A stretch of 64,000 nucleotides of DNA, from positions 1-64,000 of the forward strand of contig DF236977.1 in assembly GCA_000708835.1 (NCBI GenBank). Reading direction: 5' to 3'. This DNA comes from Klebsormidium nitens (lineage: Eukaryota > Plantae > Klebsormidiophyceae). Under the pieces are notes generated by a model. It saw only the letters and a program-made list of their open reading frames with translations, ran no database searches and was not told the DNA's origin. Numbering within the stretch: the stretch's first letter is position 1; each line of letters opens with the position of its first letter. Positions 29,401 to 42,776 of this stretch are shown piece after piece. A program made the position numbers and the translations under genes.

Positions 29401-32400
29401 AGTGCACCCTCTCGATAGGAGCGAGCGCCAGAAGCATGCGCAGAGTTGAGGCTCGACTGCACTGTTTGGAGCGCACTCTCATCCACAACTTGCAGGGCAG
29501 TCCCCCCCCGACAACGTCGTCCTTGCCGCGGCTGCGCGCGCGTCCATCAGCGCGAACCTGGAGGTGGCGGGTGAGAACGAGGTCGCGCTCTCGATGCCGC
29601 ACAGCCCCGTCTCGGCGGGCGGCCAGGAAGTCGGCGAGGCGCCCTTCCGAAGGCGGTGGAGGAGAACTAGCAAGGTGGGCTTTCCCGAATGAAGCCTTCT
29701 CGTTCGTTTCAATCGCGACGGGTGATTCTTCTCCCTTCAGTGCCACTGTTGCCTCAATCTCAGCCTTCGTGTCAGCCTTCGTGTCGTCTTCCGTAGACAG
29801 CCGTTGCTTTTGTTGGCTGGCTTTACTTCTTGGCTGACAATGCAGCTTCCTCGGCATCTTACGAAGCCTGCATCCACCTTTACACAAAAGCTGACTTCTG
29901 CAAGTGAGGCGTCTGCTTGTCTACGTCTCCCATTGCGCTCCTCGCTCCTTCCCTGGTCTGCGGGTCGGTCCGCTGTTCGTCAGTCGTAGAATAGAGGAAT
30001 AGAAGTCAAAAAATTTAAAGATCCAAGCCTTCGGGATCCACCGGGCGACATTCTATCGGACGCGATCTTTCTATTAGTTGGTGCTCATGTTCTTTAGCAA
30101 GCAAAGACATTGTGTCTTGTACCGCTCTCCCTGCAGGCCAAGCTGATGTTTGACACGTCGCTCATCCCTCGGCGACGACTGTTTGAGGTGCTCCTAGTGT
30201 GGCTGGCCTTCCTCGTCGTATCGGTGCTCAAGGTAAGGCACCCACCGACCAGTGATGTGCAGGTTTCACCTGATGAAGGCAGCGACTCAGTTCGGCGGTG
30301 CCGTGTTTGAAAAACATCGTTCCTGGAAATTTGCCGACATTGATCAGAGTGGCACAAGTTCGCATTCGATGCTGACTCGAAAGACGTATGATATTTCGTT
30401 CGCTGAAGTTTAAGTTTGTAATTAGACATGTCCAGCCGAACGCGCTTCGCTTGCTTCTGCTCGGACCTCTTTGCCTTTTTCAACCAGATTTTCATTCGCG
30501 CCGATTCTCCCACCCATCCCATCATCCTGACCCACAAATCATCCCAATTCGAAGTGCCGAACCCCCAGCGCTCCAAAGCGACGAGAGCTTCGCACTTCGC
30601 AACCTCGGAAGCTTTTGACCTCTTACCCCCGTGCCCATTTTCCCAGGGCGGCAGCAAGACCCCGAGCGTGGTGGGCGTGCGCAGCTGCCAGCCGTGGTAC
30701 TGGTCGCTGTCCGCGCTCCAGGTTCCGCTGGCCATTTTCTGCACGGCCCTCGTGGCGCGCCGCCTGGGGCAGCAGCACCACAAGCGGCTCTCCGACGGCG
30801 ACGACTACCACCCGGACGAGCTGCACTTCGGGCCCAGGCAGCTCGTGACGTACCCGCTCATCGCTCTAGTTGCAGGGGTGATCGCGGGGCTGCTCGGGAT
30901 AGGTGAGCGCGGTTCTTCTTTGATGAGTATGCCGAAGGGGCAGCACAGAAGTGGAAGAAGCTCATCCCCTGTAAATACTCTTGCAACAGTACATAGCATG
31001 AAGCGAATATTCAATAGTCTGGGAGTCTTTCTGCCAGCGAGAGGGAAGGAGTGCACAAGTTGACGGTGGGCGGGCACTTGTTTGAGGGTGCTTCGGACAA
31101 GCGGAGCGTATCGTAGTTGGTTCTGAGTCCGGCCTGCGGATGCTTAATTGATGAGAGTGGAGAGCCCCATTCCGTGACCGGGAAAAGGTCTGCAACAAAT
31201 CACTTTTGAAGAGCGGTCTTTCGCGAGTTGACGGCCTTCTGGCTTGATAAGCGGGTATTGATTTGCGGTACAGGCGGCGGTATGATCGTGGGTCCGCTGT
31301 TGCTGGAGCTGGGCATGCTGCCGCAGGTGACGGCCGCCACGGGCGCCTTCATGGTGCTCTTCTCCTCCTCGCTCGCGGTCGCGCAGTTTGCGCTGCTACA
31401 CATGATCCCACTCTACACCGGTGAGTTGAAGTATTTAGGCAGTTTTCTAAGTGGCCCACTTCCTTCGGTCACTGAGAAGCAGACACTCTCCAATTTTCGT
31501 GGTGCCTGGAATGTTATGCCATAAGCGATGACAAGCACATGGGGGATGCTCGCACGCTCTGGGGTTTGCTCCTCGCGGGTGTAATATTTTTGCGGAGGGC
31601 CTGCGTTTGATTTGAGAAAGCGAATAGTAAATCGACCGAGGGTAGCATACCTCGGGTGGGCTTCTGACCTCTGGATGCCCAGTCCGTCCAGCAGGCCCGC
31701 ATCTCAACCTCTGATGGAACTTTAACTTGCTTTGGGACCCTAGAATGCGACTCAGACGTCAGCAGTGTCTTCCGTGTCTCCCGGCTGCCGAAGCTGACGT
31801 CAGCAGCCCGTCACGTGCAGCGCTGTACTACGGCGCGGTGTGCGCGCTGTCGGGGTACATCGGGCTGAGCGTGGTGCGGTACCTGGTGAAGAAGTCGGGC
31901 AAGAGCAGCCTCATCATCTTCTCGCTCGCCATCATCATCGCCCTCAGCGCCGTCGTCATCGGTGAGCCGCAGCGGATTCGGGCTCAGGAAATCGATCGGT
32001 CAATTACTACTCACTCTTCTCTAGGCAGGGTGACTGGCTTTTGCAGTGGATCGATTTCCCTCTTCTCCATTTCTTGACTGCTCTCTTTGTTAGCTCGCAT
32101 CAGAAGGAAAAAGGCGCACCTTCTTGGAGTCATACTTCATTTTTCGTCGAGCGAGTCTGGCTTCGTTCACGCTATTATGAGTCGGGTTGGTCACCCTGAT
32201 CACCTTTAACCAGATTTAGACCAAAGCTTTTGCTTGCGTCCGTGAACTCCTCTTTCCTACATATCGAAGGTCTCCGAGGCTTTGCTGTCATCAAGGCGAT
32301 ACGCTTTCTGATGAAGCCATGCTTTCGGTTTTGCGAAGTGGCTGGTTTTTGCCGTGCTCATGCCGATACGCTGTAGGAGAATGATGCACTTTGCTCGCTC

Positions 32401-32505
32401 ATCGACCCGGCCCCTCCGTTTGAATCCGCAGGCATCTTGGGAGGCATCAAAATCGCCCACGACTTCCGGACTGGAGCATACATGGGTTTGCAGAAACTCT
32501 GCTAG
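26456..32505 (+). CDS. Sulfite exporter TauE/SafE family membrane protein (plant type), 12 exons, about 531 aa
   Basis: Exons 26456-26647, 26996-27155, 27377-27463, 27810-27923, 28347-28414, 28719-28800, 29496-29674, 30137-30232, 30647-30902, 31274-31420, 31821-31961 and 32432-32505. There is a signal-like N-terminus, then KVWP, AAGVGGGGLFVPM, KPLIDYD, GLLGIGGGMIVGPLLLELG, QVTAATGAFMVLFSSS and C-terminal YMGLQKLC. Confidence 0.92.
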
Positions 32506-33956
32506 TCAAAACCTCTGCACCAGAATGAGGCGCCTAGAGCTTTTGTTCAGACAGCTACTCTTGCAATTAGATGCTCGCTGGCTTTTGAGTTGTTGCATGC
32601 GTCTGGCCTTGACTTTGATAAGATCTGACTAACAGGAGATAAAGACAGTGCATTGCTGTAGGAACCGGCCGGCCCAAGATAATAGTAACGGCCCGAGCTT
32701 CAATCTGGATGGAACACCCTGAGTGTTATGGTAGGCTCCATTATGATCATACGTGAATATCTAGAAATTTGAGCGAAACCAGCGTAAATGACAATCTGAT
32801 CCGCATAACAGTTACTTAAATGAAAGTTGGACACATGTTCCCAGTCAAATGTGGAGGCGCAGCTCAGGCTGGTACTGAGTTTGCGGCCCGGCCGTGTCAG
32901 GTAACAACAGAATACTCTTAAGCTCAGGAGCTCAAAGAAAGTAGGCAATCTTATGTTGTAAAGCGTAATCAGCTCAATGCCACTTTAATAAGCTCGTAGT
33001 ACATGCATGTGCCGCCGGCATGCGCGCACAGCTAGGCTAGCGCCCGGCATGCATGCTGAAAATTGGCGGCATATACACGTTTGCAGCCAGGTGCGATCGC
33101 CTAGATCTTGTTTATACCATGCGTAAGGCTAACTTATACCGTTCACCTATAACGCATTCAATTTGATTAGAACCTAATTGCAGCCCGCGGTATAGCACGG
33201 ACTCTTTGAATCAGTCGATCATGGCCCCGGGCGGAACGCGCGTGGAGCCGCGAGCTCACGAGATCAGCCTCAGTGCGCGCGCGCATGGCGTGCCGAGACA
33301 ACGTATATACTTTATTGCATTGCAATGCACGCGCCGTATGTTCCAGATTGAAAGTGCAGCTAGCAATACCACGCGCGCGTCCAGGTATGACCATCATTAT
33401 ATTGCGCGTGCTGCATGCACAATTGCTATATAAGAATCAACATGCTGAGGCCATTGCGACTCGGATGCATTATAGTGCGGATGCACTGCCGAATTATTGG
33501 ACTCATAATGATCATTACACTCTAGTATGAAACTTACAACGAGCTAGCTTGATTGTTTATGTGGTTTGCATCGTCCGCAGCACTCGAATTTAGATCCTCG
33601 CTGTGTCTATGGTCCAATTGCGACTGGACATGCAAGGGAGGAGGACTGGCTGCCTGTGATCGACTTCGAGTCTACCATACAGTCTTCAAAGCTTGCAAAT
33701 CACCGACGAAATTAGGTGGGAATGCACAAAGGGAGCCGAAAATGGATGTTGACTGCCATTTCCAGATGCCAGCTCACTTAGCTTTCCTATGATGTGACAC
33801 GCATGTCTTCGCTGACGATTCATTGCCGACTTGATCTCTGAACGCTATGCTCAATTGGCGTGCACTATGGGGGGAACAAACTTGTGTGCGTGCTCTGTGC
33901 ATCATTCAAGGAAGGTTTTCGAGTAGAACCAAGCGGAGTAAACAACTGTGTTCTTG

Positions 33957-36854
33957 CTAGTGCTCTGGTCGTTCGTTCCTCGAATGCAAGTACCTGAAAG
34001 GGAGAACTTTTCTGGTTTGCGCGAGATCGTGAGCCTGCGATAAGGCGCAGCAAAAGTGCGCCTGGCTCATGCCGCGAGTTGGCGCCTTGACAAAATACTC
34101 ATGTGCCAATCTGTGTTCGACCGCAGCATTCAGGTCAACGTTCCGCAAAAGGCATCTAGCAGTTTCACAATATACCGTCCTTGAACAGCCGCTAAGGTTC
34201 GACAAAGCCTCGGCCCTACAGCCTTACTTTCAAGAAATGTGGCAAAGTCGTAAGTAAGAAGGCGTACCTGGCGGTCTGGTAGCCCATCCAGTAGTAGGCT
34301 GAGAGCAGGTCCTGAAGGACAGGGTCGATCTGCGGGAGGGCCCCATCGGCCTGTGCGCCGGCGACTGCCCCTGCTAAGACGCTGCTGGGCCGAGGCGCAT
34401 CACCTGCGAAACAAGGCCCCAGTTCAAAAGCTGACTCGAAAGACTTAGCTGGGGTCGGAAAAAAGGAGCAAATATGATCTTGGGCTGCTGAGCAGGAGGC
34501 AGGGTCGGAGCACTCTCATCGCGGTGCCAGACAGAACAGAGCCAAGCCAGCGTGAAAGCGGCCATCCTCCTGGGGCAGTCAGCGTAACGATAGGCGGGTC
34601 AGCAGTCAGCTCACTGCTCGAATGTAAGTGGTAGTCACCGTAAGTCACCCGCACAATCTTGGTCTGTGCGTCAAAGTGGGGACTCACAAAAGCTTGATAC
34701 AAACCGAGCCAAGCAATCTCAATAATCAGAACACGGTTTGGACTGCTTCACGCTCATACAAGAGTCGAGCTTATCCGAAACCAAGGACAGGGATGCACGA
34801 CCCACCTCCTACAGTAGCAGCCTCTTGCCAATTAGAAACCCCTGCCGGTTGCTCTGCTCTCGCCTTCCATTCCGTTCCACTAGCCGTCCCCTCCCCTTCG
34901 TATTCAGAAACCAGTCGCCCGCACACTGCCCCATCTTCCTGCGTCCCAACCGTTCTCCCCTCACACACTGACGGCTCTCCTTCCCCAGCAGACGGAAACA
35001 CAAACCCCTGCACCCCCGCTTGCGGTGATGTATCTCCATCTCGTCTCACCCAGCTGCCCGGAAGGTCCCCCAGAAAGGCGTGATCCTCCCAACGGAGCTC
35101 CTCCAGGCTCTTGTTGCGGTACGCCTCCATGGCCGTCAGGCACTGGTACATTTCGGGGGGGAAGCCCCAGTCTTCTATAGAGGTCGGGTGGTATTTGACC
35201 CCCCTGGTGCCGCGAGGGTAACCCTGAAGGCGCAGCTCTTCTAGGCTTTTGCTCTCGTATTCTGGCATAGCCGTGACTGTCATCAACTTCTCGCCGGAAT
35301 CCCCCCCATCTGGACTAAGGGTTGGCTCAAAGTTTGTGCGGCGAACAGCGGCAGAAGACTGCTCTTGGGCAACGTTCAGAATACCTACATGGGTGCTACT
35401 TGCACATGGGGCGGGGCCGGCTGGGACAGAGTGCTGCTCTAAGGGGGGGTTCTGCGGCAACTGGAAAGTCGGCCAAGCGGGATAATCTTGAGGGGAGGCC
35501 GCCGAGACAGAGGTTTTGAACTTATCGTTCGCAACTGCTGGCGCAGGAGCAGAGGGCGAGGTCTTTACTGCACCCCCCTGTTCAGCAGTAGCCGTTGGAA
35601 CAGACTCAGGGGAGGCGTCAGGGGGGCCTGCGACAGGGTAGTAGTAGTGGTGGTGGTGAATGATGGTGGTGGGAGGGGGGTGGGTTTCGGCTGCGTCGGT
35701 AGCCCCTTGCTGCGACGCCTGCCATTGCAGCCACTCATAGTACTGCTCAACCGTGTACTCTGACTCCTGCTGTGCTGGGACCCCTTTGATTTCGGGCCCC
35801 TCTAGATTCTTCGCCTCAATCTCTGACCCCTCATCATGCTTTCTAGAATCAGCCCCGCTTAATTGAGGTTCAGGATCTCCGACACTGGCCTCAAAAGTTT
35901 CCCCGCTTTCGACTTCCTCAGCGTTTCCTTCGTCTATATGAGCTGCTAAAATCAAACTCTCTAGCTCGCTTTCGTTGACGTCGGACTCCGCTTCTTCCTC
36001 TACTTCTTCCACAGAAGCGGCACTTTCTCCCCGCCGTTTCTGCAGGTCGTTCTCTCGCAAGTGGTCCAGGCTGCCTTCCGTGTCCTCTTGCTTGAAAGGA
36101 CTCGAGTACGGATCTTTGGGCAGCGGCTCGACAGGATGACCGTGCATTTCCTGCCACGAGCGGGGACACAAACCCTTAGAAAGGCCTTCAACTTATCGTA
36201 CAGATTGTCTTCTTGACCATTGTGATGCTTATAGCCACTCCTGTTGACCATTGTGAGCCAGCATCACATGCCAAACGTCAGCTTCGACCAATCCAATGAA
36301 GTACCTCGCTAAAGGCTGAGATCAGAAATAAAGGTTGAGACTGATCAGGAGCACAAAGGACACTGATGATGTGCCAGCATGCAACAGCAGGCTTGCAGGG
36401 AGTGGATATAAAATGGGACAAAATTGCAATAGAAGCAACAGCACGCATTGTCGGAAAGCACCATCATCGCTCAATTGACACTGGGATCTTGTAGTCTAAC
36501 TGACTGCCACACCACCACCACCACCACCTGAGCTCTTGCTTCGCCAATTGTGATGGAGATACATCAATTTTAGAAATTAACATCCTTATATGCCACCACA
36601 ACAAGGTACTTGTGGCTAAGAGATGATTTGAACTAGATATCTTCTGATGCAACTTTTCAAAGGGCCTGCTTGAACCACAACGCTTCCTCCAGGGAACCTG
36701 ATAACTACAACTAGTAAAAGATTGTCAGACGAGAAGGTGTCGACCAATGACAACAACTTACCTGGTACTTCTGCAGTGCTGAGTCGAAGGCTCGCACCAG
36801 CATTGGGTCATCCCACCGCATGTTTTCAGATCGCGGCATGTCCCTATTGGCCAT
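33957..36854 (-). CDS. SMN: SMN (survival motor neuron)-family protein carrying two tandem Nup98-type GLEBS motifs, 4 exons, about 536 aa
   Basis: Exons 36854-36762, 36150-34806, 34403-34268 and 33993-33957 are GT-AG with phases 0/1/2 matching. The N-terminus RWDDPMLVRAFDSALQKYQEMH is a Gemin2-binding motif and the C-terminus DPVLQDLLSAYYWMGYQTARYL is a YG-box. Internal motifs are TAMPEYESKSLEELRLQGY and YQCLTAMEAYRNKSLEELRWEDH. No Tudor domain is visible. Confidence 0.85.
36511..36528. repeat. (ACC)6 microsatellite in SMN intron 1
   Basis: accaccaccaccaccacc read directly. Confidence 0.9.
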
Positions 36855-37379
36855 CTTGTCCACTGCTTCGGGTTCTGACATCATCAAATGTCACTAACAA
36901 ATTGCCCAGACAAAAGGTGGTACAATGTGTGTTATGTAGCAGTATCTCCAATGGGATACATTTCGTTCTCAATGCTGCACCCTCGAAAGCACCTAAAATT
37001 TTTGCATAAGTACGCCAATGGCACAACTGAAGGAAGGAGGGTAACACGAATTGTGTGGCCTTACGGATAAACAGCACGATGTTTTGTTGCGGTGGTGTCC
37101 TGATAAACGTCACGCAAAGAAGAGGCGGAGAGGCAGCATAGGTCGCAACCTCATGCGTCTTGTAGCCGCACCATTTGAAAGAAGTAGGACGCGCGCAATC
37201 GCCTGGGCTCACTCTTCACTCTTCGAAGTTCACCCTTCACTCTTCAGAATCACACTTCATTCAGGCTCAGAGACTTCAAAGTGCGAGTGAGTCAGGCCCG
37301 GCCGGGGGCAAAGAGAGACCGCGGACGTCCATAAATTTAATGTCGAGCATCTCGAGTCACTGAGTTGGCACTCAGTGGC

Positions 37380-37927: not shown

Positions 37928-38395
37928 CTCAGTGGCAGTACTGGGATTGTCCGAACCGTCCAAAATCTGTGCCCGGCACAATCTGAACGGCCCAGATCCT
38001 GAGGGCCTTGGTTGCAGACCAACACGTAGTCGTCTGTCGAGAGGCCACGTCGTCTGAGCCCTGTGAATACGCAGGTTCCGACTGCAGTGCACACTGTGCA
38101 CAGCACCCTTCAATCAGTCCAATGCCTGAACATGGGCGGCACGATCGACGACTCGATCTGGAAGACCGTGACAGTCTTCAGACTTCTGTGATCTGGACAG
38201 CTTCAGATCAGCATTGCTTTCTAGCTCGACTGATCAAACTTGCAGAATTCTTCACCTCAGCGCTTGTTATTCGAAAGCGCCATTTTAGCTTCACACAGAG
38301 ATCCAACTTCTTACGGCTCGTACGTTGGTCATTCGTCACGCCATATCAAGTGAGAAAGCTGAGGATCGACTAACAGCCAGTTTTAAAAAGGGACC

Positions 38396-41300
38396 ATGGC
38401 TTCCATCGCTTCTGCGGCTCGAGTGGCCGGGGCGCAGTCCCTTGCTTCCTGTGTGGCCAGTGCAAGCTATGGGACGCAACCGCAGGCAAATGCACTCTTT
38501 GTGCCGGCTCTGCCTGCAAAGCAACAAGCTGCTCTTGGGCCCCAATCTCAGGTACTATACGCTCGCTTTCTTCTTTATCAAAGTGCCCTTCTCAACCTGC
38601 ATTTAGGTGATCTGTCTGCAAATGCGCATGTTTTTGTTGTGAGAATCTGGGCAGGCAGCAGTCTCATGCAGATCTCTCTGCGAGCTTTGAAAGCAGTTTC
38701 ATAATGCAGATCTCAACCTTGTTTTGCCGTTGCCTCCAACCCTGCATTTTGCTGGCCATTTTTACCATAGTGGATCTTTGGTTAGCATAGATGGAAGGCA
38801 TGTGGTAATGTAATACCTTGAAAGCTTAGCACCAATTTGAAGTTTCCACTTTCGCAGTAGTACTCCAAGCTTCCCTTTCTCACTTTATATGTTACGCTTT
38901 CTCTCACGGTTTTTGTGTCCATTGGGGGCTTGTTGAAGTGGTTGTGTTCAGCATCCAGGCGCAATGCAAGCTGTAAAAGTATTAAAGCAAAGACAGAGAA
39001 TGAGAGGCACGGAGTGCTGCTCTTTGATTCTGGCACTGCATTGTACCATCGGTATGCCTTCTGACCAGATTTATTAAAATTCCCGCAGGTCGACCTTACC
39101 TCTTCTTTCATTGGCACTGGTCTGCCTAGCCTCAGCAGGCCCGCGAAGAGGATCAAAGCCCAGGCTTCCTCATCGAATAGATCTGCGGTGGTAAGCAGCC
39201 GTCTCTCATTCATAGATGATTGCAGCTGATCAAGGAAATGTTTTACCTGAGCATGAACGCTAGAGACGATGCAAAGTCGCTAGAGTCGCATGACATCGAA
39301 ATCATTAAGTCTCTTGCAACAAGACAAGATGGGCATGTAAAGTAAAACACTCTGCTTCTGGTGGAGTACAGATTCCGCCAAGAATTTTAGGATCCAACTG
39401 TTCTGATAAATGGAAACTGGCCCAGACTCCCTGATTATGCTGTCAGAAGTTGTTAGAGGAAATGTATGAATCCATTGAATTCGGGGATGTCAACAGTATG
39501 CGCCCACTTGTGGCTGCTTTTGCCTATTTGATTGTATTGGGATAGTATTTTACACTAGAGGCGCCCAGTTTCGAAAGTCAGCTGAACTCAGAGACCGATC
39601 AATGCACTGAGTATTGAGTAGTAGTAAGGGGCTTGGCTTATGTACTCGACCCTCGCTGAACCAATTATTAATCTATTTTGGCGTTCCTAGAAAGAAGGCT
39701 GCCAGAATCTCATCCCCCTCTTGTGTCCTTCCGGTGCCGCTGTGCTTTAGATGCCGCTGTGCATTTGCAGTTCATCTGATGCCCGGTTACTGTTACAGGT
39801 TGCCAGGACTGCAGCTGCAGGCAAGCAAATTGAGGTCGACGTAGAAAAGCCCCTTGGTCTCACCCTGGGTCAAAAGTCAAATGGTGGGTCTCTTTCCTCC
39901 GCCTGTTTTCTTGTCTTAGTTTTTACCTGTGAATTCAGCGCTCTCTTGACGCTCAAGTTCAATCTAGAGCTTCCGTTGGAATGAAGCAGTCGGCTGTTTT
40001 CTTAGAGATTGTCTGACGTTGCATAACTCGTGACATACAGGTGTCATCACGATCACACAAGTCTCCGGTAATGCCGCGAAGGCCGGGCTCAAAACCGGTG
40101 ACCAAGTTGTGTATACGTCCTCCTTCTTTGGAGATGAGCTGTGGCCGGCAGACAAGCTCGGTTTCACGCAGACTGCCATCAAGGCCAAGTCCGACTCCGT
40201 GTACTTCGTGGTGCAAAGGTGAGAATCATTGGGCTACCAAACAAAAAGACATGGACATAGTGATTGAGGTCACTGGCGCTTCAGAAGGACAGCGTTACTT
40301 TGCCGACTTGCAAGCGGCCCATGCTGATATTGTAAACGGTGGTGTCGAGTCGATGACATTATACCGAGAGCTGACCTTTGAAGAACGCCTTGATCATAGG
40401 AGAGTATGTTCACTCGTACCATGTTGTGGATGTTGATTCGATCTAGAGCACTGCATTAAGGAATAGCACCAGAGTTTCAGAGTCGACACACGTTTGTTTT
40501 GATGTTAAGACGATCAGGCTGCTGAAGAAGCTGATCTTGCAGGGGTGGAGAACCGGTGAACACCAAGCGGCTGTCCACACGCAAGGCCCCCTCCCGGTTT
40601 GGAAAGCAGCTGACTGCCGCACAGAAGGTGAGCATCGACGAGGACTTGCCGGCGTTTGAAGAGACCGGTCGAGTTGCGAAGTTGCTCGGAAGGAAGGTGC
40701 TTCCGAATCACATTCTTTGGAAATTTGTTCATTGATTTACGAAAGGCTCGGAAGAGGTGGACGGCTGGGAACGAGTTTCTGCAAAAAGACTCTTGACTCT
40801 CATCATATGAAGGCTCTTGCGTATTGGTCGGTAGAGAGTTATGATCTCGGGATTTTAGGCGGTTGGTTGACCAGAAAATTTACCCCGATGGGAGGCAGTC
40901 TCCACTTATATTCGATTATTGGCGGTCTGGGCCTGCTTACATCCGGTAACATCGTGGCGCCTCTCCTTCTGCTATACTCAATGAAAGTGTCATTATTCGG
41001 TCCGACATGCTGACCCGCCGTCATTTTCGCAGGAGCGGGCCACGCACATCTGCTTAGACTGTGGATACATCTACACCCTTGGGAAATCCTTCGAAGATCA
41101 GGTAAGCACGCCAGTCCGCACTCCTGCATTGTCTTAAACGGCGTCCCTCACGCTTCGAGACCACCCTACTGCTTGTTTATTAATTACAGTTTGGGAGCCT
41201 CGCGTTCAGGCCAGATTAATTGCTTCTGCCAGCTAGATTGATTGTTGAATCCAATCGTAGGTCGGAAAAGCATGCTCAAGCACGCGCAGCTAGCATTCCT

Positions 41301-41564
41301 GCCTTTTAGCATTTCTGTTTCTAGCTTCCATTCGACTAAGCTGGACTCTCTAGTTTGTTATCAGTAGTCCTGATATATGGATTCTGCGACTTGCAGCCCG
41401 ACGACTTCCTGTGCCCTCAGTGCCGGGCACCAAAGACGCGCTTTGCTGGATACGACCCCGAGACTGGCAGGGTTTCGGGTGGAGGCACTCCGTTGAGCGT
41501 GTTGATTAGCATCCTTGTCTCAATCAGTGCAATTGGTGGCCTGTTCTATTACCTATCCTTGTAG
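38396..41564 (+). CDS. ENH1: Plastid PDZ + rubredoxin protein (ENH1-like), 6 exons, about 246 aa
   Basis: Exons 38396-38551, 39799-39883, 40041-40218, 40543-40627, 41033-41101 and 41397-41564. It has a transit-peptide-like start, IEVDVEKPLGLTLGQK, GNAAKAGLKTGDQVVYTSSFFGDELWPADKLGF, HICLDCGYIY, FLCPQCRAPK and a C-terminal TM helix. Confidence 0.93.
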
Positions 41565-42776
41565 ATTTTTATAACCAACTAATTGCCAGGTGACAATCTT
41601 AGGCGACAGAATATTTGAAGCGTTGGGGTGAAGTCACACATATACACTTACCGCGGCGCAATTGATCGGACTGAAGCAAAGCATACTTGTACATTCCTTG
41701 CTGCTTTTCAAGGGCTTCCGCAATCTGTTAGTGCATTGCGCTTAGTTCGATTTCGATTCATAAAAAACTAGCCGCCTCCATATATACTTGCCGTCTTTAC
41801 CTCAGCCATGACTCAACATGGTTGCCCTCAGCACATTGGATCGTTCGATCGAATACCATGCATGGATTGTAAGAGTGGGCGGCACATTTGGAGCTGTCGA
41901 GCCGATCAGACTGCAGGACTTCGGGACCCAGCTGGGCGGCCGGGCACGTTTATTGCATGCTAGCAACATGCACAATAAGATCGTCGACCGGCCGCGCGAA
42001 AAAGCACATGCATGCAATTATAAGCTGCTTGCAAGAGTCCTGGCAATGGAGCCCATCCGGAGAACCGATTGGCTCATCTTTTGCCTTTTAAATTTTCCAC
42101 TCTGGAGCTTGAAATGCAATGCTATATAAGCATTGCGTGTATACTATAGTATGTAACTCCGGACAAACTCATCGTCTGTTCTACTATAATTTTCCAGCTT
42201 GAGTCCGCCAGTGCTTGAAGCAATCCGACCATCTACAGCCTTTGCCGCACCGGCCGGCCGCGCCATGCATGCCGCCATCTTTGCATGCCAGATTACAGCT
42301 ATACTAAGCACCCGGCGTGCCAGTAAAGAGTGCCAGCCATGCAACCTATATGCATGAGCCAGACGTACCACGGTGATCAATGATGGTGAGGCTATATGTC
42401 CATAAGAGGACGCGGGCTTCAGGGACGGGTTAAGCCAGATCACCATTAACAAGGGTTTTAGCTAAGCACCTTACGTCTTCGACGCGCACAGTGTTAGCCT
42501 TGGGCCACTTCGCTTCTTGTACTCGTTATGCAGTCTTTACATTAAGCTGTACTAGGATCACTCCAATCTGTGTTCGATGGGACAAATGCAAAGAAAGGCA
42601 GATCATTAAACGGGCTGTTCGTGTGCACATGAGTCAACCACCCTACCTAAGAACGGACCTGTAATAAAACTCTAACATTTAATCACAGCGCAACAATCCT
42701 GTGGCAGAGCTTTTTCGTCTGCATTAGCCACCTTCGTATATCCACTTCCGCTAAGACACAAAACGCAACCTGAGTC

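What the first reader, a model, noticed from the sequence alone, without database searches (positions are those of the whole stretch)
33957..36854. SMN fused to two Nup98-type GLEBS motifs: candidate link between snRNP assembly and Rae1-dependent nuclear transport
Seen: one reading frame joins an SMN Gemin2-binding helix (WDDPMLVRAFDSALQKY), a long acidic/Pro-rich linker, GLEBS-1 (35289-35218, KLMTVTAMPEYESKSLEELRLQGY), GLEBS-2 (35148-35080, YQCLTAMEAYRNKSLEELRWEDH) and a YG-box. There are no FG repeats, Nup98 autoprotease domain or Tudor domain. Known: human NUP98 GLEBS is HQCITAMKEYESKSLEELRLEDY and binds the WD40 protein Rae1/Gle2. SMN oligomerises through the YG-box and assembles Sm cores with Gemin2, and fungal SMN lacks Tudor. 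I know of no described SMN-GLEBS fusion. Inference: oligomeric SMN would display many Rae1 (or Bub3) docking sites, coupling snRNP biogenesis to export, nuclear pores or nuclear bodies.
Basis: partly seen in the sequence, partly recalled or inferred. Interest (0 to 1): 0.9.

Follow-up and report, generated by a model that had tools for sequence, protein, structure and literature searches.

The report
Algal SMN-like protein carrying two GLEBS motifs
A green alga (Klebsormidium nitens) makes one spliced mRNA for a disordered protein with the two ends typical of the snRNP-assembly factor SMN and, between them, two copies of the short nucleoporin motif that binds the RNA-export protein Rae1, a combination I found described nowhere and whose partners are still untested.

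Summary
The minus strand carries a 4-exon gene, with CDS 36854-36762, 36150-34806, 34403-34268 and 33993-33957. It encodes the 536-aa Klebsormidium nitens 'hypothetical protein' KFL_000280060. Spliced RNA contigs from four studies join all four exons with GT-AG introns.

Pfam finds two Nup98-type GLEBS motifs (E=1e-16). No FG repeat, autopeptidase or Tudor domain is present. The N-terminal helix matches the SMN Gemin2-binding domain just below Pfam's threshold (20.5 against 22.2 bits). Its only PDB hits are the SMN peptides solved with Gemin2. The C-terminal helix is a plant-type YG box: Pfam misses it, but my own YG profile, a shuffle test and Atlas features support it.

Three further loci from related algae keep all three parts while the linkers drop to about 36% identity. 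An exhaustive HMMER search found GLEBS fused to RING, Deltex and AAA+ domains elsewhere, but no other SMN-GLEBS protein. Land-plant SMN-like clusters list no GLEBS.

Best reading: a Tudor-less SMN-like scaffold of the Klebsormidium lineage that recruits Rae1. Partner binding and function are inferred, not shown. I rate it a new variant of a known kind, of moderate to high interest.

The parts
33646..37235 (-). Approximate extent of the mature transcript (about 2.3 kb after splicing). The 5' UTR is about 380 nt and the 3' UTR about 310 nt.
   Evidence: RNA contigs of 2153-2342 nt run 15-35 nt beyond 37200 and about 54 nt beyond 33700. The ends are approximate.
36762..36854 (-). CDS part of exon 1 (M1-Q31). 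In-frame ATGs at 36884 and 36881 could add 10 residues; an in-frame stop lies at 36893-36891.
   Evidence: Sequence, ORF list, P0001, RNA joint.
36762..36818 (-). SMN-type Gemin2-binding helix, RWDDPMLVRAFDSALQKYQ (R13-Q31).
   Evidence: PF20636 at E=3.4e-4, 20.5 bits against cut-off 22.2. The only PDB hits are SMN peptides 2LEH and 5XJL. RWDDPMLVRA is invariant in the orthologues. AF2 helix 17-33 with pLDDT about 85.
36151..36761 (-). Intron 1 (611 nt, GT-AG). It contains a (GGT)n microsatellite at about 36508-36527.
   Evidence: Joint present in four RNA runs; sequence.
34806..36150 (-). Exon 2 (E32 to the first base of G480): acidic linker, conserved motifs and both GLEBS.
35938..35985 (-). 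Conserved block S.V.ESELE.LILAAH (residues 87-102), function unknown.
   Evidence: Invariant in four orthologues. AF2 helix 92-100.
35701..35760 (-). Conserved helix EYT..QYYEWL.WQA.QQGA (residues 162-181), function unknown.
   Evidence: Invariant block. AF2 helix 165-178 with pLDDT about 75. Only a weak DUF4587 similarity, E about 0.1.
35632..35658 (-). Invariant HHHHYYYPV (residues 196-204), function unknown.
35218..35337 (-). GLEBS-1, the full unit (T303-Y342): N-arm TNFEPT and C-arm LMTVTAMPEYESKSLEELRLQGY.
   Evidence: PF21240. Aligns to Nup98 in the Rae1 complexes 3MMY, 4OWR, 7BYF and 7VPG. The EE pair is kept. Conserved in L002 and L003, degenerate in L001.
35080..35208 (-). GLEBS-2, the full unit (T346-H388): N-arm GVKYHPT and C-arm YQCLTAMEAYRNKSLEELRWEDH.
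   Evidence: PF21240 best stretch 367-387. KSLEELRW is invariant in all four orthologues.
34404..34805 (-). Intron 2 (402 nt, GT-AG), with low-depth unspliced contigs.
   Evidence: Joint in four runs. Minor contigs at 34401-34705 have depth about 2.6-2.8 against 23-33 for the spliced contig.
34268..34403 (-). Exon 3 (rest of G480 to the first two bases of R525).
34268..34329 (-). Core of the YG-box-like helix, IDPVLQDLLSAYYWMGYQTA(R) (I505-R525). It continues as YLHSRNERPEH in exon 4.
   Evidence: 100% identical in every orthologous copy recovered. Custom YG profile and shuffle test. Atlas top clusters are SMN_YG-box. AF2 helix 507-531 with pLDDT 87-90. Matches the plant YG boxes in Gupta 2021 Fig. 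S1A. Pfam PF20635 gives no hit.
33994..34267 (-). Intron 3 (274 nt, GT-AG).
   Evidence: Joint in four runs.
33957..33993 (-). CDS part of exon 4 (last base of R525 to H536, plus stop TAG at 33959-33957).

Best explanation
The locus is a real, expressed, single-copy-looking gene of Klebsormidium nitens. It encodes an acidic (pI 4.5), almost wholly disordered 536-aa scaffold. I read it as the Klebsormidium-lineage version of the Tudor-less 'SMN-like' protein of streptophytes.

Shown here: the N-terminal helix is of the SMN Gemin2-binding type, and the C-terminal helix is of the plant YG-box type. Two tandem, full-length Nup98-type GLEBS hairpin motifs sit in the linker. Each keeps the Glu-Glu pair that salt-bridges to Rae1 in the solved complex.

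Inferred mechanism:
- The YG helix makes dimers or oligomers.
- Each N-terminus holds Gemin2, and through it the Sm proteins.
- Each subunit can dock up to two WD40 propellers of the Rae1/Gle2 type on its GLEBS motifs.
- GLEBS-loaded Rae1 exposes a basic patch, and the complex binds single-stranded RNA in vitro. Recruited Rae1 would therefore give this minimal SMN complex, which has no Tudor domain, an RNA- or RNP-binding WD40 subunit, or link it to the Rae1 export pathway.
- Rae1 has a single GLEBS-binding face, so Rae1 bound here is not at the same time bound to Nup98. The link is to an off-pore pool of Rae1, or competes with Nup98. It is not a direct tether to the pore.
For: Gene and mRNA: three GT-AG joints in single contigs from four studies. 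The product is identical to deposited KFL_000280060.

GLEBS: PF21240 at E=1e-16 in two stretches. Residue-level alignment to Nup98 chains solved with Rae1. E201/E202 of Nup98 form the key salt bridges to Rae1 R172/R216 (PMC3783196), and both copies keep the matching EE. Each unit also has the upstream '[IV]K[FY]xP'-like arm, and the spacing 'Y-PRGTRGVKYHPT' resembles the tandem GLEBS of P0029.

SMN ends: PF20636 at 20.5 bits. Only SMN-Gemin2 complex peptides are hit in the PDB. The custom YG profile gives the YG exon and its orthologues three of the top five places in a 184-kaa database, and 2 of 20,000 shuffles score as high. Atlas whole-protein top hits are streptophyte SMN_G2-BD clusters (0.89, 200 shared features). 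The C-terminal part hits SMN_YG-box clusters (0.86). AF2 gives confident helices exactly at these two ends.

Constraint: L001 (syntenic), L002 and L003 keep all three modules. The linker falls to about 35-39% identity, while the YG core stays 100% identical and KSLEELRW stays invariant.
Against: - The G2BD score is below Pfam's gathering threshold. Pfam's YG-box model and a PDB search with the YG profile find nothing.
- The second and third YxxG glycines are replaced (YQTA, then RYLH).
- No interaction was tested. AlphaFold-Multimer was not available.
- I could not check that K. nitens has Rae1, Bub3 or Gemin2, or whether it has a second SMN-type gene.
- GLEBS-1 is degenerate in one close relative (L001), so two functional copies are not universal.
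- The fusion was seen only in this small clade. Land-plant SMN_G2-BD clusters list no GLEBS.
Confidence: 0.6

Rival explanations
1. The protein is not an SMN relative. It is a lineage-specific disordered Rae1/Bub3-binding protein whose terminal helices resemble SMN's by chance or convergence, and it has nothing to do with snRNP assembly.
For: The G2BD is below the Pfam cut-off. The YG box is not found by Pfam or in the PDB. Custom-profile E-values are only 0.05-0.6. Atlas scores under 0.9 are 'leads only'.
Against: Two independent SMN-type motifs sit at exactly the SMN positions, the extreme N- and C-termini. Both are the most conserved parts of the protein. SMN peptides are the only PDB hits for the N-terminus. 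The C-terminus matches the published plant YG boxes residue by residue: LL.A.Y..G[YF].T.[KR]YL.
Confidence: 0.15
2. The GLEBS motifs recruit Bub3 rather than Rae1, linking the protein to the spindle checkpoint or kinetochore instead of RNA export.
For: GLEBS motifs of Bub1/BubR1 bind the Rae1 paralogue Bub3. Cross-binding between the two systems has been reported (my own knowledge, not checked here).
Against: The motifs match the Nup98-type model PF21240 at 61 bits. The Bub1/Mad3 GLEBS family gave no hit even at E<=10. The best residue-level matches are Nup98 chains from Rae1 complexes.
Confidence: 0.12
3. The GLEBS copies are a neutral relic of a duplication or exon capture from Nup98 into a tolerant disordered linker, and have no present function.
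For: GLEBS-1 has decayed in L001: it has an insertion, has lost 'SKS', and Pfam sees only one copy. GLEBS motifs are shuffled into many unrelated proteins. Land-plant SMN-like clusters lack them.
Against: GLEBS-2 'KSLEELRW' and the N-arm residues are invariant across orthologues whose surrounding linker has diverged to about 36% identity. The fraction of invariant residues is 0.4-0.6 in the GLEBS windows and about 0.07-0.2 in the linkers. Both copies are intact in L002 and L003.
Confidence: 0.1
4. The fusion is an assembly or annotation artefact that joins separate genes.
For: None beyond the general risk with automatic gene models.
Against: Single spliced RNA contigs from four studies span all four exons with no mismatches. 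Three independent loci show the same order of exons.
Confidence: 0.02

Closest known systems
Tudor-less SMN of fission yeast (Smn1/Yab8) and the plant 'SMN-like' proteins of Gupta et al. 2021 (PMC8287954); database clusters named 'Survival Motor Neuron Gemin2-binding domain-containing protein' in Streptophyta
   Same: All have an N-terminal Gemin2-binding helix, a disordered middle, a C-terminal YG-type helix and no Tudor domain. The C-terminus matches the plant YG boxes: LLNAWYSAGFYTGKYL against LLSAYYWMGYQTARYL. The Atlas nearest clusters are these streptophyte families.
   Different: This protein carries two Nup98-type GLEBS motifs and extra conserved blocks (ESELE.LILAAH, YYEWL.WQ, HHHHYYYP) in the linker. 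The streptophyte clusters list no PF21240. At 536 aa it is longer than the clusters (303-423 aa). The second glycine of the zipper is Ala.
Nup98/Nup116 GLEBS (Gle2/Rae1-binding sequence, PF21240; structures 3MMY, 4OWR, 7BYF, 7VPG)
   Same: Both arms of the hairpin motif are present and the Glu-Glu pair is kept. The C-arm is near-identical to human Nup98: ITAMKEYESKSLEELRLEDY against VTAMPEYESKSLEELRLQGY.
   Different: There are no FG/GLFG repeats, no autoproteolytic domain and no Nup96 part. There are two copies in tandem. The loop between the arms is shorter.
Other non-nucleoporin GLEBS fusions found here: RING (Macleaya cordata OVA04479.1), RING plus Deltex C-terminal domain (P0019), AAA+ ATPase (Myrmecia bisecta KAK9829337.1), multi-GLEBS proteins (Microplitis mediator XP_057337105.1, MMETSP P0004)
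   Same: GLEBS is used as a repeated, portable docking motif outside Nup98.
   Different: None of them has SMN-type ends. All are uncharacterised, so they give no functional precedent.
WD40 subunits of the metazoan SMN complex (Gemin5, unrip/STRAP)
   Same: The concept only: an SMN scaffold that carries a WD40 propeller, which in the case of Gemin5 binds snRNA (my own knowledge).
   Different: There is no homology. Here the propeller would be Rae1, recruited through a linear motif in SMN itself. This is entirely inferred.

Membership tests
SMN (survival motor neuron) family | N-terminal Gemin2-binding helix (PF20636) | tested here: inconclusive
   E=3.4e-4 at 20.5 bits, below the gathering score of 22.2. 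A profile of three orthologues hits only SMN peptides 2LEH (E=0.045) and 5XJL (E=0.12) in the whole PDB. WDD..L..A.D.A is conserved, including the position of human D44 by my numbering. AF2 helix 17-33. The evidence leans towards met.
SMN (survival motor neuron) family | C-terminal YG-box glycine-zipper helix (PF20635) | tested here: inconclusive
   Pfam gives no hit and the PDB profile search gives no hit. A custom profile from Gupta 2021 Fig. S1A gives the YG exon and its orthologues three of the top five places, E 0.05-0.6, with 2 of 20,000 shuffles scoring as high. Atlas top clusters are SMN_YG-box at 0.86. AF2 helix 507-531 has pLDDT about 88. Only the first YxxG is intact (YWMG); the next is YQTA. 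Land-plant SMN_G2-BD clusters also list no PF20635, which may mean Pfam's model also misses the plant-type YG box.
SMN (survival motor neuron) family | Tudor domain binding methylated Sm tails (metazoan SMN only; absent in fungal SMN) | tested here: not met
   No PF06003 or PF00567 hit at E<=10. The AF2 model has no beta strands. The feature does not define the Tudor-less subgroup.
SMN (survival motor neuron) family | Binds Gemin2, self-oligomerises and assists Sm-core assembly | not testable with these tools
   This needs biochemistry or a multimer prediction.
GLEBS motif (Nup98 type, PF21240) | Sequence match to the Gle2/Rae1-binding sequence | tested here: met
   E=1e-16 at 61 bits against cut-off 27, in two stretches. 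Alignment to Nup98 in 3MMY, 4OWR, 7BYF and 7VPG.
GLEBS motif (Nup98 type, PF21240) | Glu-Glu pair that salt-bridges to Rae1 R172/R216 | tested here: met
   SLEELR is present in both copies and in the orthologues. The role of E201/E202 is taken from PMC3783196.
GLEBS motif (Nup98 type, PF21240) | Both arms of the ~57-residue hairpin | tested here: inconclusive
   Pfam aligns only model positions 18-38. The upstream arms TNFEPT and VKYHPT resemble IKFNPP/IKFVPP by eye and are conserved (T.FEPT is invariant). The loop between the arms is shorter than in Nup98.
GLEBS motif (Nup98 type, PF21240) | Physical binding to Rae1/Gle2 | not testable with these tools
   No multimer prediction or assay was available. 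The presence of Rae1 in K. nitens was not checked.
Nup98/Nup116 nucleoporins | FG/GLFG repeat domain | tested here: not met
   The 536 aa contain no FG dipeptide and there is no Nucleoporin_FG hit.
Nup98/Nup116 nucleoporins | C-terminal autoproteolytic domain (PF04096) | tested here: not met
   No hit. Compare P0013, a true Nup98, at E=1.7e-38.
Bub1/Mad3 GLEBS (Bub3-binding) | Match to the Mad3/BUB1 GLEBS family | tested here: not met
   No such family was listed at E<=10. HMMER's speed filters may drop very weak matches.

The most novel reading that the evidence does not exclude
In the Klebsormidium lineage, the minimal SMN complex (SMN-like plus Gemin2, with no Tudor domain) has recruited the RNA-export propeller Rae1 as a built-in subunit, through two GLEBS motifs in SMN itself. 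GLEBS-loaded Rae1, with its basic ssRNA-binding patch, would then serve as the complex's RNA- or RNP-binding WD40 module, a functional analogue of Gemin5 or unrip. This would give a direct physical link between RNA export and Sm-core assembly. The YG-mediated oligomer would display many Rae1 molecules off the pore.
Probability: 0.25. Interest if true: 0.75.

Novelty: new variant of a known kind. Interest (0 to 1): 0.6.

Why it matters
Whether plants have an SMN at all is an open question. A 2026 Arabidopsis study concludes that the existence of an SMN orthologue is uncertain and that GEMIN2 may be the only conserved subunit (PMC13596061).

This early-diverging streptophyte alga has a clearly expressed protein with both SMN hallmarks. 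It gives a concrete candidate for testing Gemin2 binding and snRNP assembly in the green lineage.

The embedded GLEBS pair proposes a specific, mutable interaction (the Glu-Glu pair) between snRNP biogenesis and Rae1, which no model organism shows.

The search also shows that GLEBS is a widely shuffled docking motif, found with RING, Deltex and AAA+ domains. That suggests Rae1 or Bub3 propellers are recruited to many more processes than the pore and the kinetochore.

Tried and rejected
- Word-based homologue search with the N-terminal 45 residues found only the protein itself.
- Metagenome scans found nothing. The mixed alignment had no usable conserved stretch. The YG-exon alignment and the exon-2 alignment matched patterns, but no relative was confirmed. 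The two JGI orthologues came through the protein collection instead.
- Pfam's YG-box model gave no hit on the whole protein or on residues 470-536. A PDB search with a YG profile gave no hit.
- A YG profile built from the four plant sequences alone was uninformative, because they are nearly identical and over-specific.
- I could not obtain a land-plant SMN-like sequence for direct alignment. I relied on Atlas cluster-level Pfam lists and on the YG boxes printed in Gupta 2021.
- AF2 of the whole protein is mostly disordered (mean pLDDT 46), so I made no fold search.
- Earlier findings of this scan held nothing on this place or on these words.
- No paper mentions the gene.
- A gene-fusion artefact was considered and rejected on the RNA evidence.
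- A Nup98 paralogue was considered and rejected because there are no FG repeats and no autopeptidase.
- I left the third protein-homologue search unused, because no query available here could have reached the land-plant proteins by shared words.
Full report
**The observation.** The large ORF 34771-36171 holds both GLEBS motifs. A short upstream ORF holds RWDDPMLVRAFDSALQKYQ and ends at a GTAAGT donor. A downstream frame holds IDPVLQDLLSAYYWMGYQTAR, which ends at a GTACGC donor.

Pfam scores the large ORF against Nup98_GLEBS (PF21240) at E=8e-17 in two stretches. It scores the upstream ORF against SMN_G2-BD (PF20636) at E=0.002.

A protein search identifies the organism and the gene model. The exon-2 ORF is 98% identical to the 536-aa 'hypothetical protein KFL_000280060' of Klebsormidium nitens (P0001).
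- Start ATG at 36854-36852, stop TAG at 33959-33957.
- GLEBS-1, K319-Y342, at 35289-35218.
- GLEBS-2, Y366-H388, at 35148-35080.

Twenty RNA runs hold the stretch. I laid four of them, from four different studies. Each gave a single contig of 2153-2342 nt with no mismatches, joining four exons through three joints. With GT-AG placement the introns are 36761-36151, 34805-34404 and 34267-33994.

The CDS is therefore 36854-36762, 36150-34806, 34403-34268 and 33993-33957. That is 1611 nt, or 536 codons plus the stop, and it equals P0001. Low-depth contigs inside intron 2 (about 2.6-2.8 against 23-33) suggest a little unspliced RNA. In-frame ATGs at 36884 and 36881, with an in-frame stop at 36893-36891, could add ten residues to the N-terminus.

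**What the parts are: GLEBS.** On the full protein, PF21240 scores 61 bits (cut-off 27, E=1e-16) in two stretches. No Tudor, FG, autopeptidase or Bub1/Mad3 family appears even at E<=10. The protein contains no FG dipeptide and has a pI of 4.5.

Against the PDB, the protein's matches are Nup98 chains, and the best four are the GLEBS peptides crystallised with Rae1 (3MMY, 4OWR, 7BYF, 7VPG). The alignment is klmtvTAMpEYESKSLEELRLqgY against KHQCITAMKEYESKSLEELRLEDY.

According to PMC3783196, the GLEBS is a hairpin of about 57 residues lying on top of the Rae1 propeller. Nup98 E201/E202 form the crucial salt bridges to Rae1 R172/R216. Both K. nitens copies keep that Glu-Glu pair. Each copy also has an upstream arm (TNFEPT, VKYHPT) resembling Nup98's IKFNPP. 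The junction between the copies, 'Y-PRGTRGVKYHPT', looks like the tandem GLEBS of an unrelated protein, P0029: 'DYLANRRGTRTTIKFVPP'. The upstream-arm match is by eye only.

**What the parts are: the SMN ends.** The evidence here is weaker but consistent.
- N-terminus: PF20636 gives 20.5 bits against a gathering score of 22.2 (E=3.4e-4).
- A profile of the N-termini of three orthologues finds exactly two sequences among 177,635 in the PDB. Both are the SMN peptide solved with Gemin2: 2LEH at E=0.045 and 5XJL at E=0.12. The alignment is WDDPMLVRAfDsAv against WDDTALIKAYDKAV.
- C-terminus: Pfam's YG-box model and a PDB profile search find nothing.
- Gupta et al. 2021 print YG boxes from many eukaryotes, including four plants. 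The plant ones are LLNAWYSAGFYTGKYL in cotton and LLNSWYAAGFYTCRYL in corn. They align without gaps to LLSAYYWMGYQTARYL here.
- A small profile built only from their non-plant sequences gives the K. nitens YG exon and its orthologues three of the top five places in a database of 2182 sequences (184 kaa), with E 0.05-0.6. Only 2 of 20,000 composition-preserving shuffles reach the real score.
- Atlas language-model features put the whole protein nearest to streptophyte 'SMN Gemin2-binding domain-containing' clusters (0.89, 200 of 256 features). They put residues 480-536 nearest to SMN_YG-box clusters (0.86).
- The land-plant clusters themselves carry PF20636 but not PF20635. This may mean the Pfam model also misses the plant-type YG box.
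- AlphaFold2 predicts a mostly disordered chain (mean pLDDT 46). Confident helices lie exactly at the G2BD (17-33, about 85) and the YG box (507-531, about 88), with two more at conserved linker motifs.

**Conservation.** The central exon has relatives in one Logan assembly (P0002, 61% identity) and two JGI metagenomes (P0003 and P0005, 36-39%). I fetched their contigs.

All three show the same three-part gene. An upstream exon encodes RWDDPMLVRA[FL]D.A..KY. A central exon carries the two GLEBS. A downstream exon encodes IDPVLQDLLSAYYWMGYQTAR, which is identical in every copy.

L001 is syntenic with the window from about 30.1 to 41.6 kb, so it is the orthologous locus of a close relative. L002 shares only the gene.

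Along exon 2 the fraction of invariant residues is 0.4-0.9 in five blocks and about 0.07-0.2 in the linkers. The five blocks are:
- ESELE.LILAAH
- EYT..QYYEWL.WQA.QQGA
- HHHHYYYPV
- GLEBS-1
- GLEBS-2, where KSLEELRW is invariant

One exception stands out. In L001, GLEBS-1 has an insertion and has lost 'SKS', and Pfam sees only one copy there.

**How far does the fusion reach?** An exhaustive HMMER profile search of 1.84 billion representatives returned 140 proteins at E<=0.001. Re-scoring them domain by domain shows that everything outside the Klebsormidium group matches only the GLEBS part of the profile. None has a G2BD-like or YG-like pattern. This covers only the 140 best GLEBS matches.

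The hits show that GLEBS is a shuffled, often multiplied module:
- Nup98A-like paralogues with 5-6 copies in Salvia and Impatiens
- an uncharacterised wasp protein with about 8-12 copies
- a RING protein of Macleaya
- a RING plus Deltex C-terminal protein
- an AAA+ protein of the green alga Myrmecia bisecta

The land-plant SMN_G2-BD clusters list no PF21240. The SMN-GLEBS combination therefore appears restricted to the Klebsormidium lineage. Whether it was gained there or lost elsewhere cannot be decided here.

**Literature.** Three papers contain both 'GLEBS' and 'SMN', and none connects them. No paper names the gene. A 2026 Plant Physiology paper states that the existence of a plant SMN orthologue is uncertain. 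It cites Gupta et al. for YG-box-bearing SMN-like proteins in some plants but not in Arabidopsis.

**Mechanism.** Shown: the gene, the mRNA, the motif content and the conservation.

Inferred from the families:
- The YG helix oligomerises.
- The N-terminal helix binds Gemin2.
- Each GLEBS binds one Rae1-type propeller.

I favour Rae1 over Bub3 because the motifs match the Nup98-type model and not the Bub1/Mad3 one.

The Rae1:GLEBS complex carries a conserved basic patch and binds ssRNA in vitro (PMC3783196). The most interesting reading is therefore that Rae1 supplies an RNA- or RNP-binding WD40 subunit to a minimal, Tudor-less SMN complex.

The GLEBS hairpin occupies Rae1's single GLEBS-binding face, so Rae1 bound here cannot be bound to Nup98 at the same time. 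The protein would hold or compete for an off-pore pool of Rae1.

**Verdict.** This is a new variant of a known kind: an SMN-like scaffold with an inserted pair of nucleoporin docking motifs. It is lineage-restricted and functionally untested.

My rough confidences for the separate claims are:
- gene model and motif content: about 0.95
- SMN-family relationship: about 0.75
- Rae1 binding: about 0.7
- the proposed functional coupling: about 0.25-0.3

Noticed in passing
P0010, P0015, P0019, P0008, P0006, P0007 (hits): Nup98-type GLEBS motifs occur, often multiplied, in proteins that are not nucleoporins. Examples are a RING protein (Macleaya cordata OVA04479.1, 4 copies), a RING plus Deltex C-terminal domain protein (P0019, 3 copies), an AAA+ ATPase (Myrmecia bisecta KAK9829337.1, 3 copies) and a wasp protein with about 8-12 copies (Microplitis mediator XP_057337105.1). 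Nup98A-like paralogues in Salvia and Impatiens have 5-6 copies. All appear uncharacterised.
   Followed up: partly
window 35938-35985, 35701-35760, 35632-35658 (minus strand): Three blocks in the linker are invariant across orthologues and match no known family: S.V.ESELE.LILAAH, EYT..QYYEWL.WQA.QQGA (predicted helix, pLDDT about 75) and HHHHYYYPV. There is only a weak DUF4587 similarity (E about 0.1). They may be further docking motifs.
   Followed up: partly
L001:5900-6000 (orthologue from SRR23617307): In the closest relative, GLEBS-1 is degenerate. It reads APEYEKRLEELRLKELRLKEY, with an internal 4-residue duplication and loss of 'SKS'. GLEBS-2 is intact.
   Followed up: partly
window 34401-34705: Low-depth RNA contigs (about 2.6-2.8 against 23-33 for the spliced contig) lie inside intron 2 in two runs. 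This could be a little intron retention or pre-mRNA.
   Followed up: no
window 36881-36893 (minus strand): Two in-frame ATGs (36884, 36881) lie upstream of the annotated start, and an in-frame stop sits at 36893-36891. The protein may begin MMSEPEAVDKMANRD..., ten residues longer than the deposited model.
   Followed up: no
window about 36508-36527: There is a (GGT)n microsatellite inside intron 1.
   Followed up: no
window 30100-32700 and 38000-41570; L001: The neighbouring genes on both sides are collinear with the Logan contig L001 (tblastx identities of roughly 60-95%). The whole ~11-kb neighbourhood is therefore conserved in a second Klebsormidium-like genome. I did not identify these genes.
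   Followed up: no
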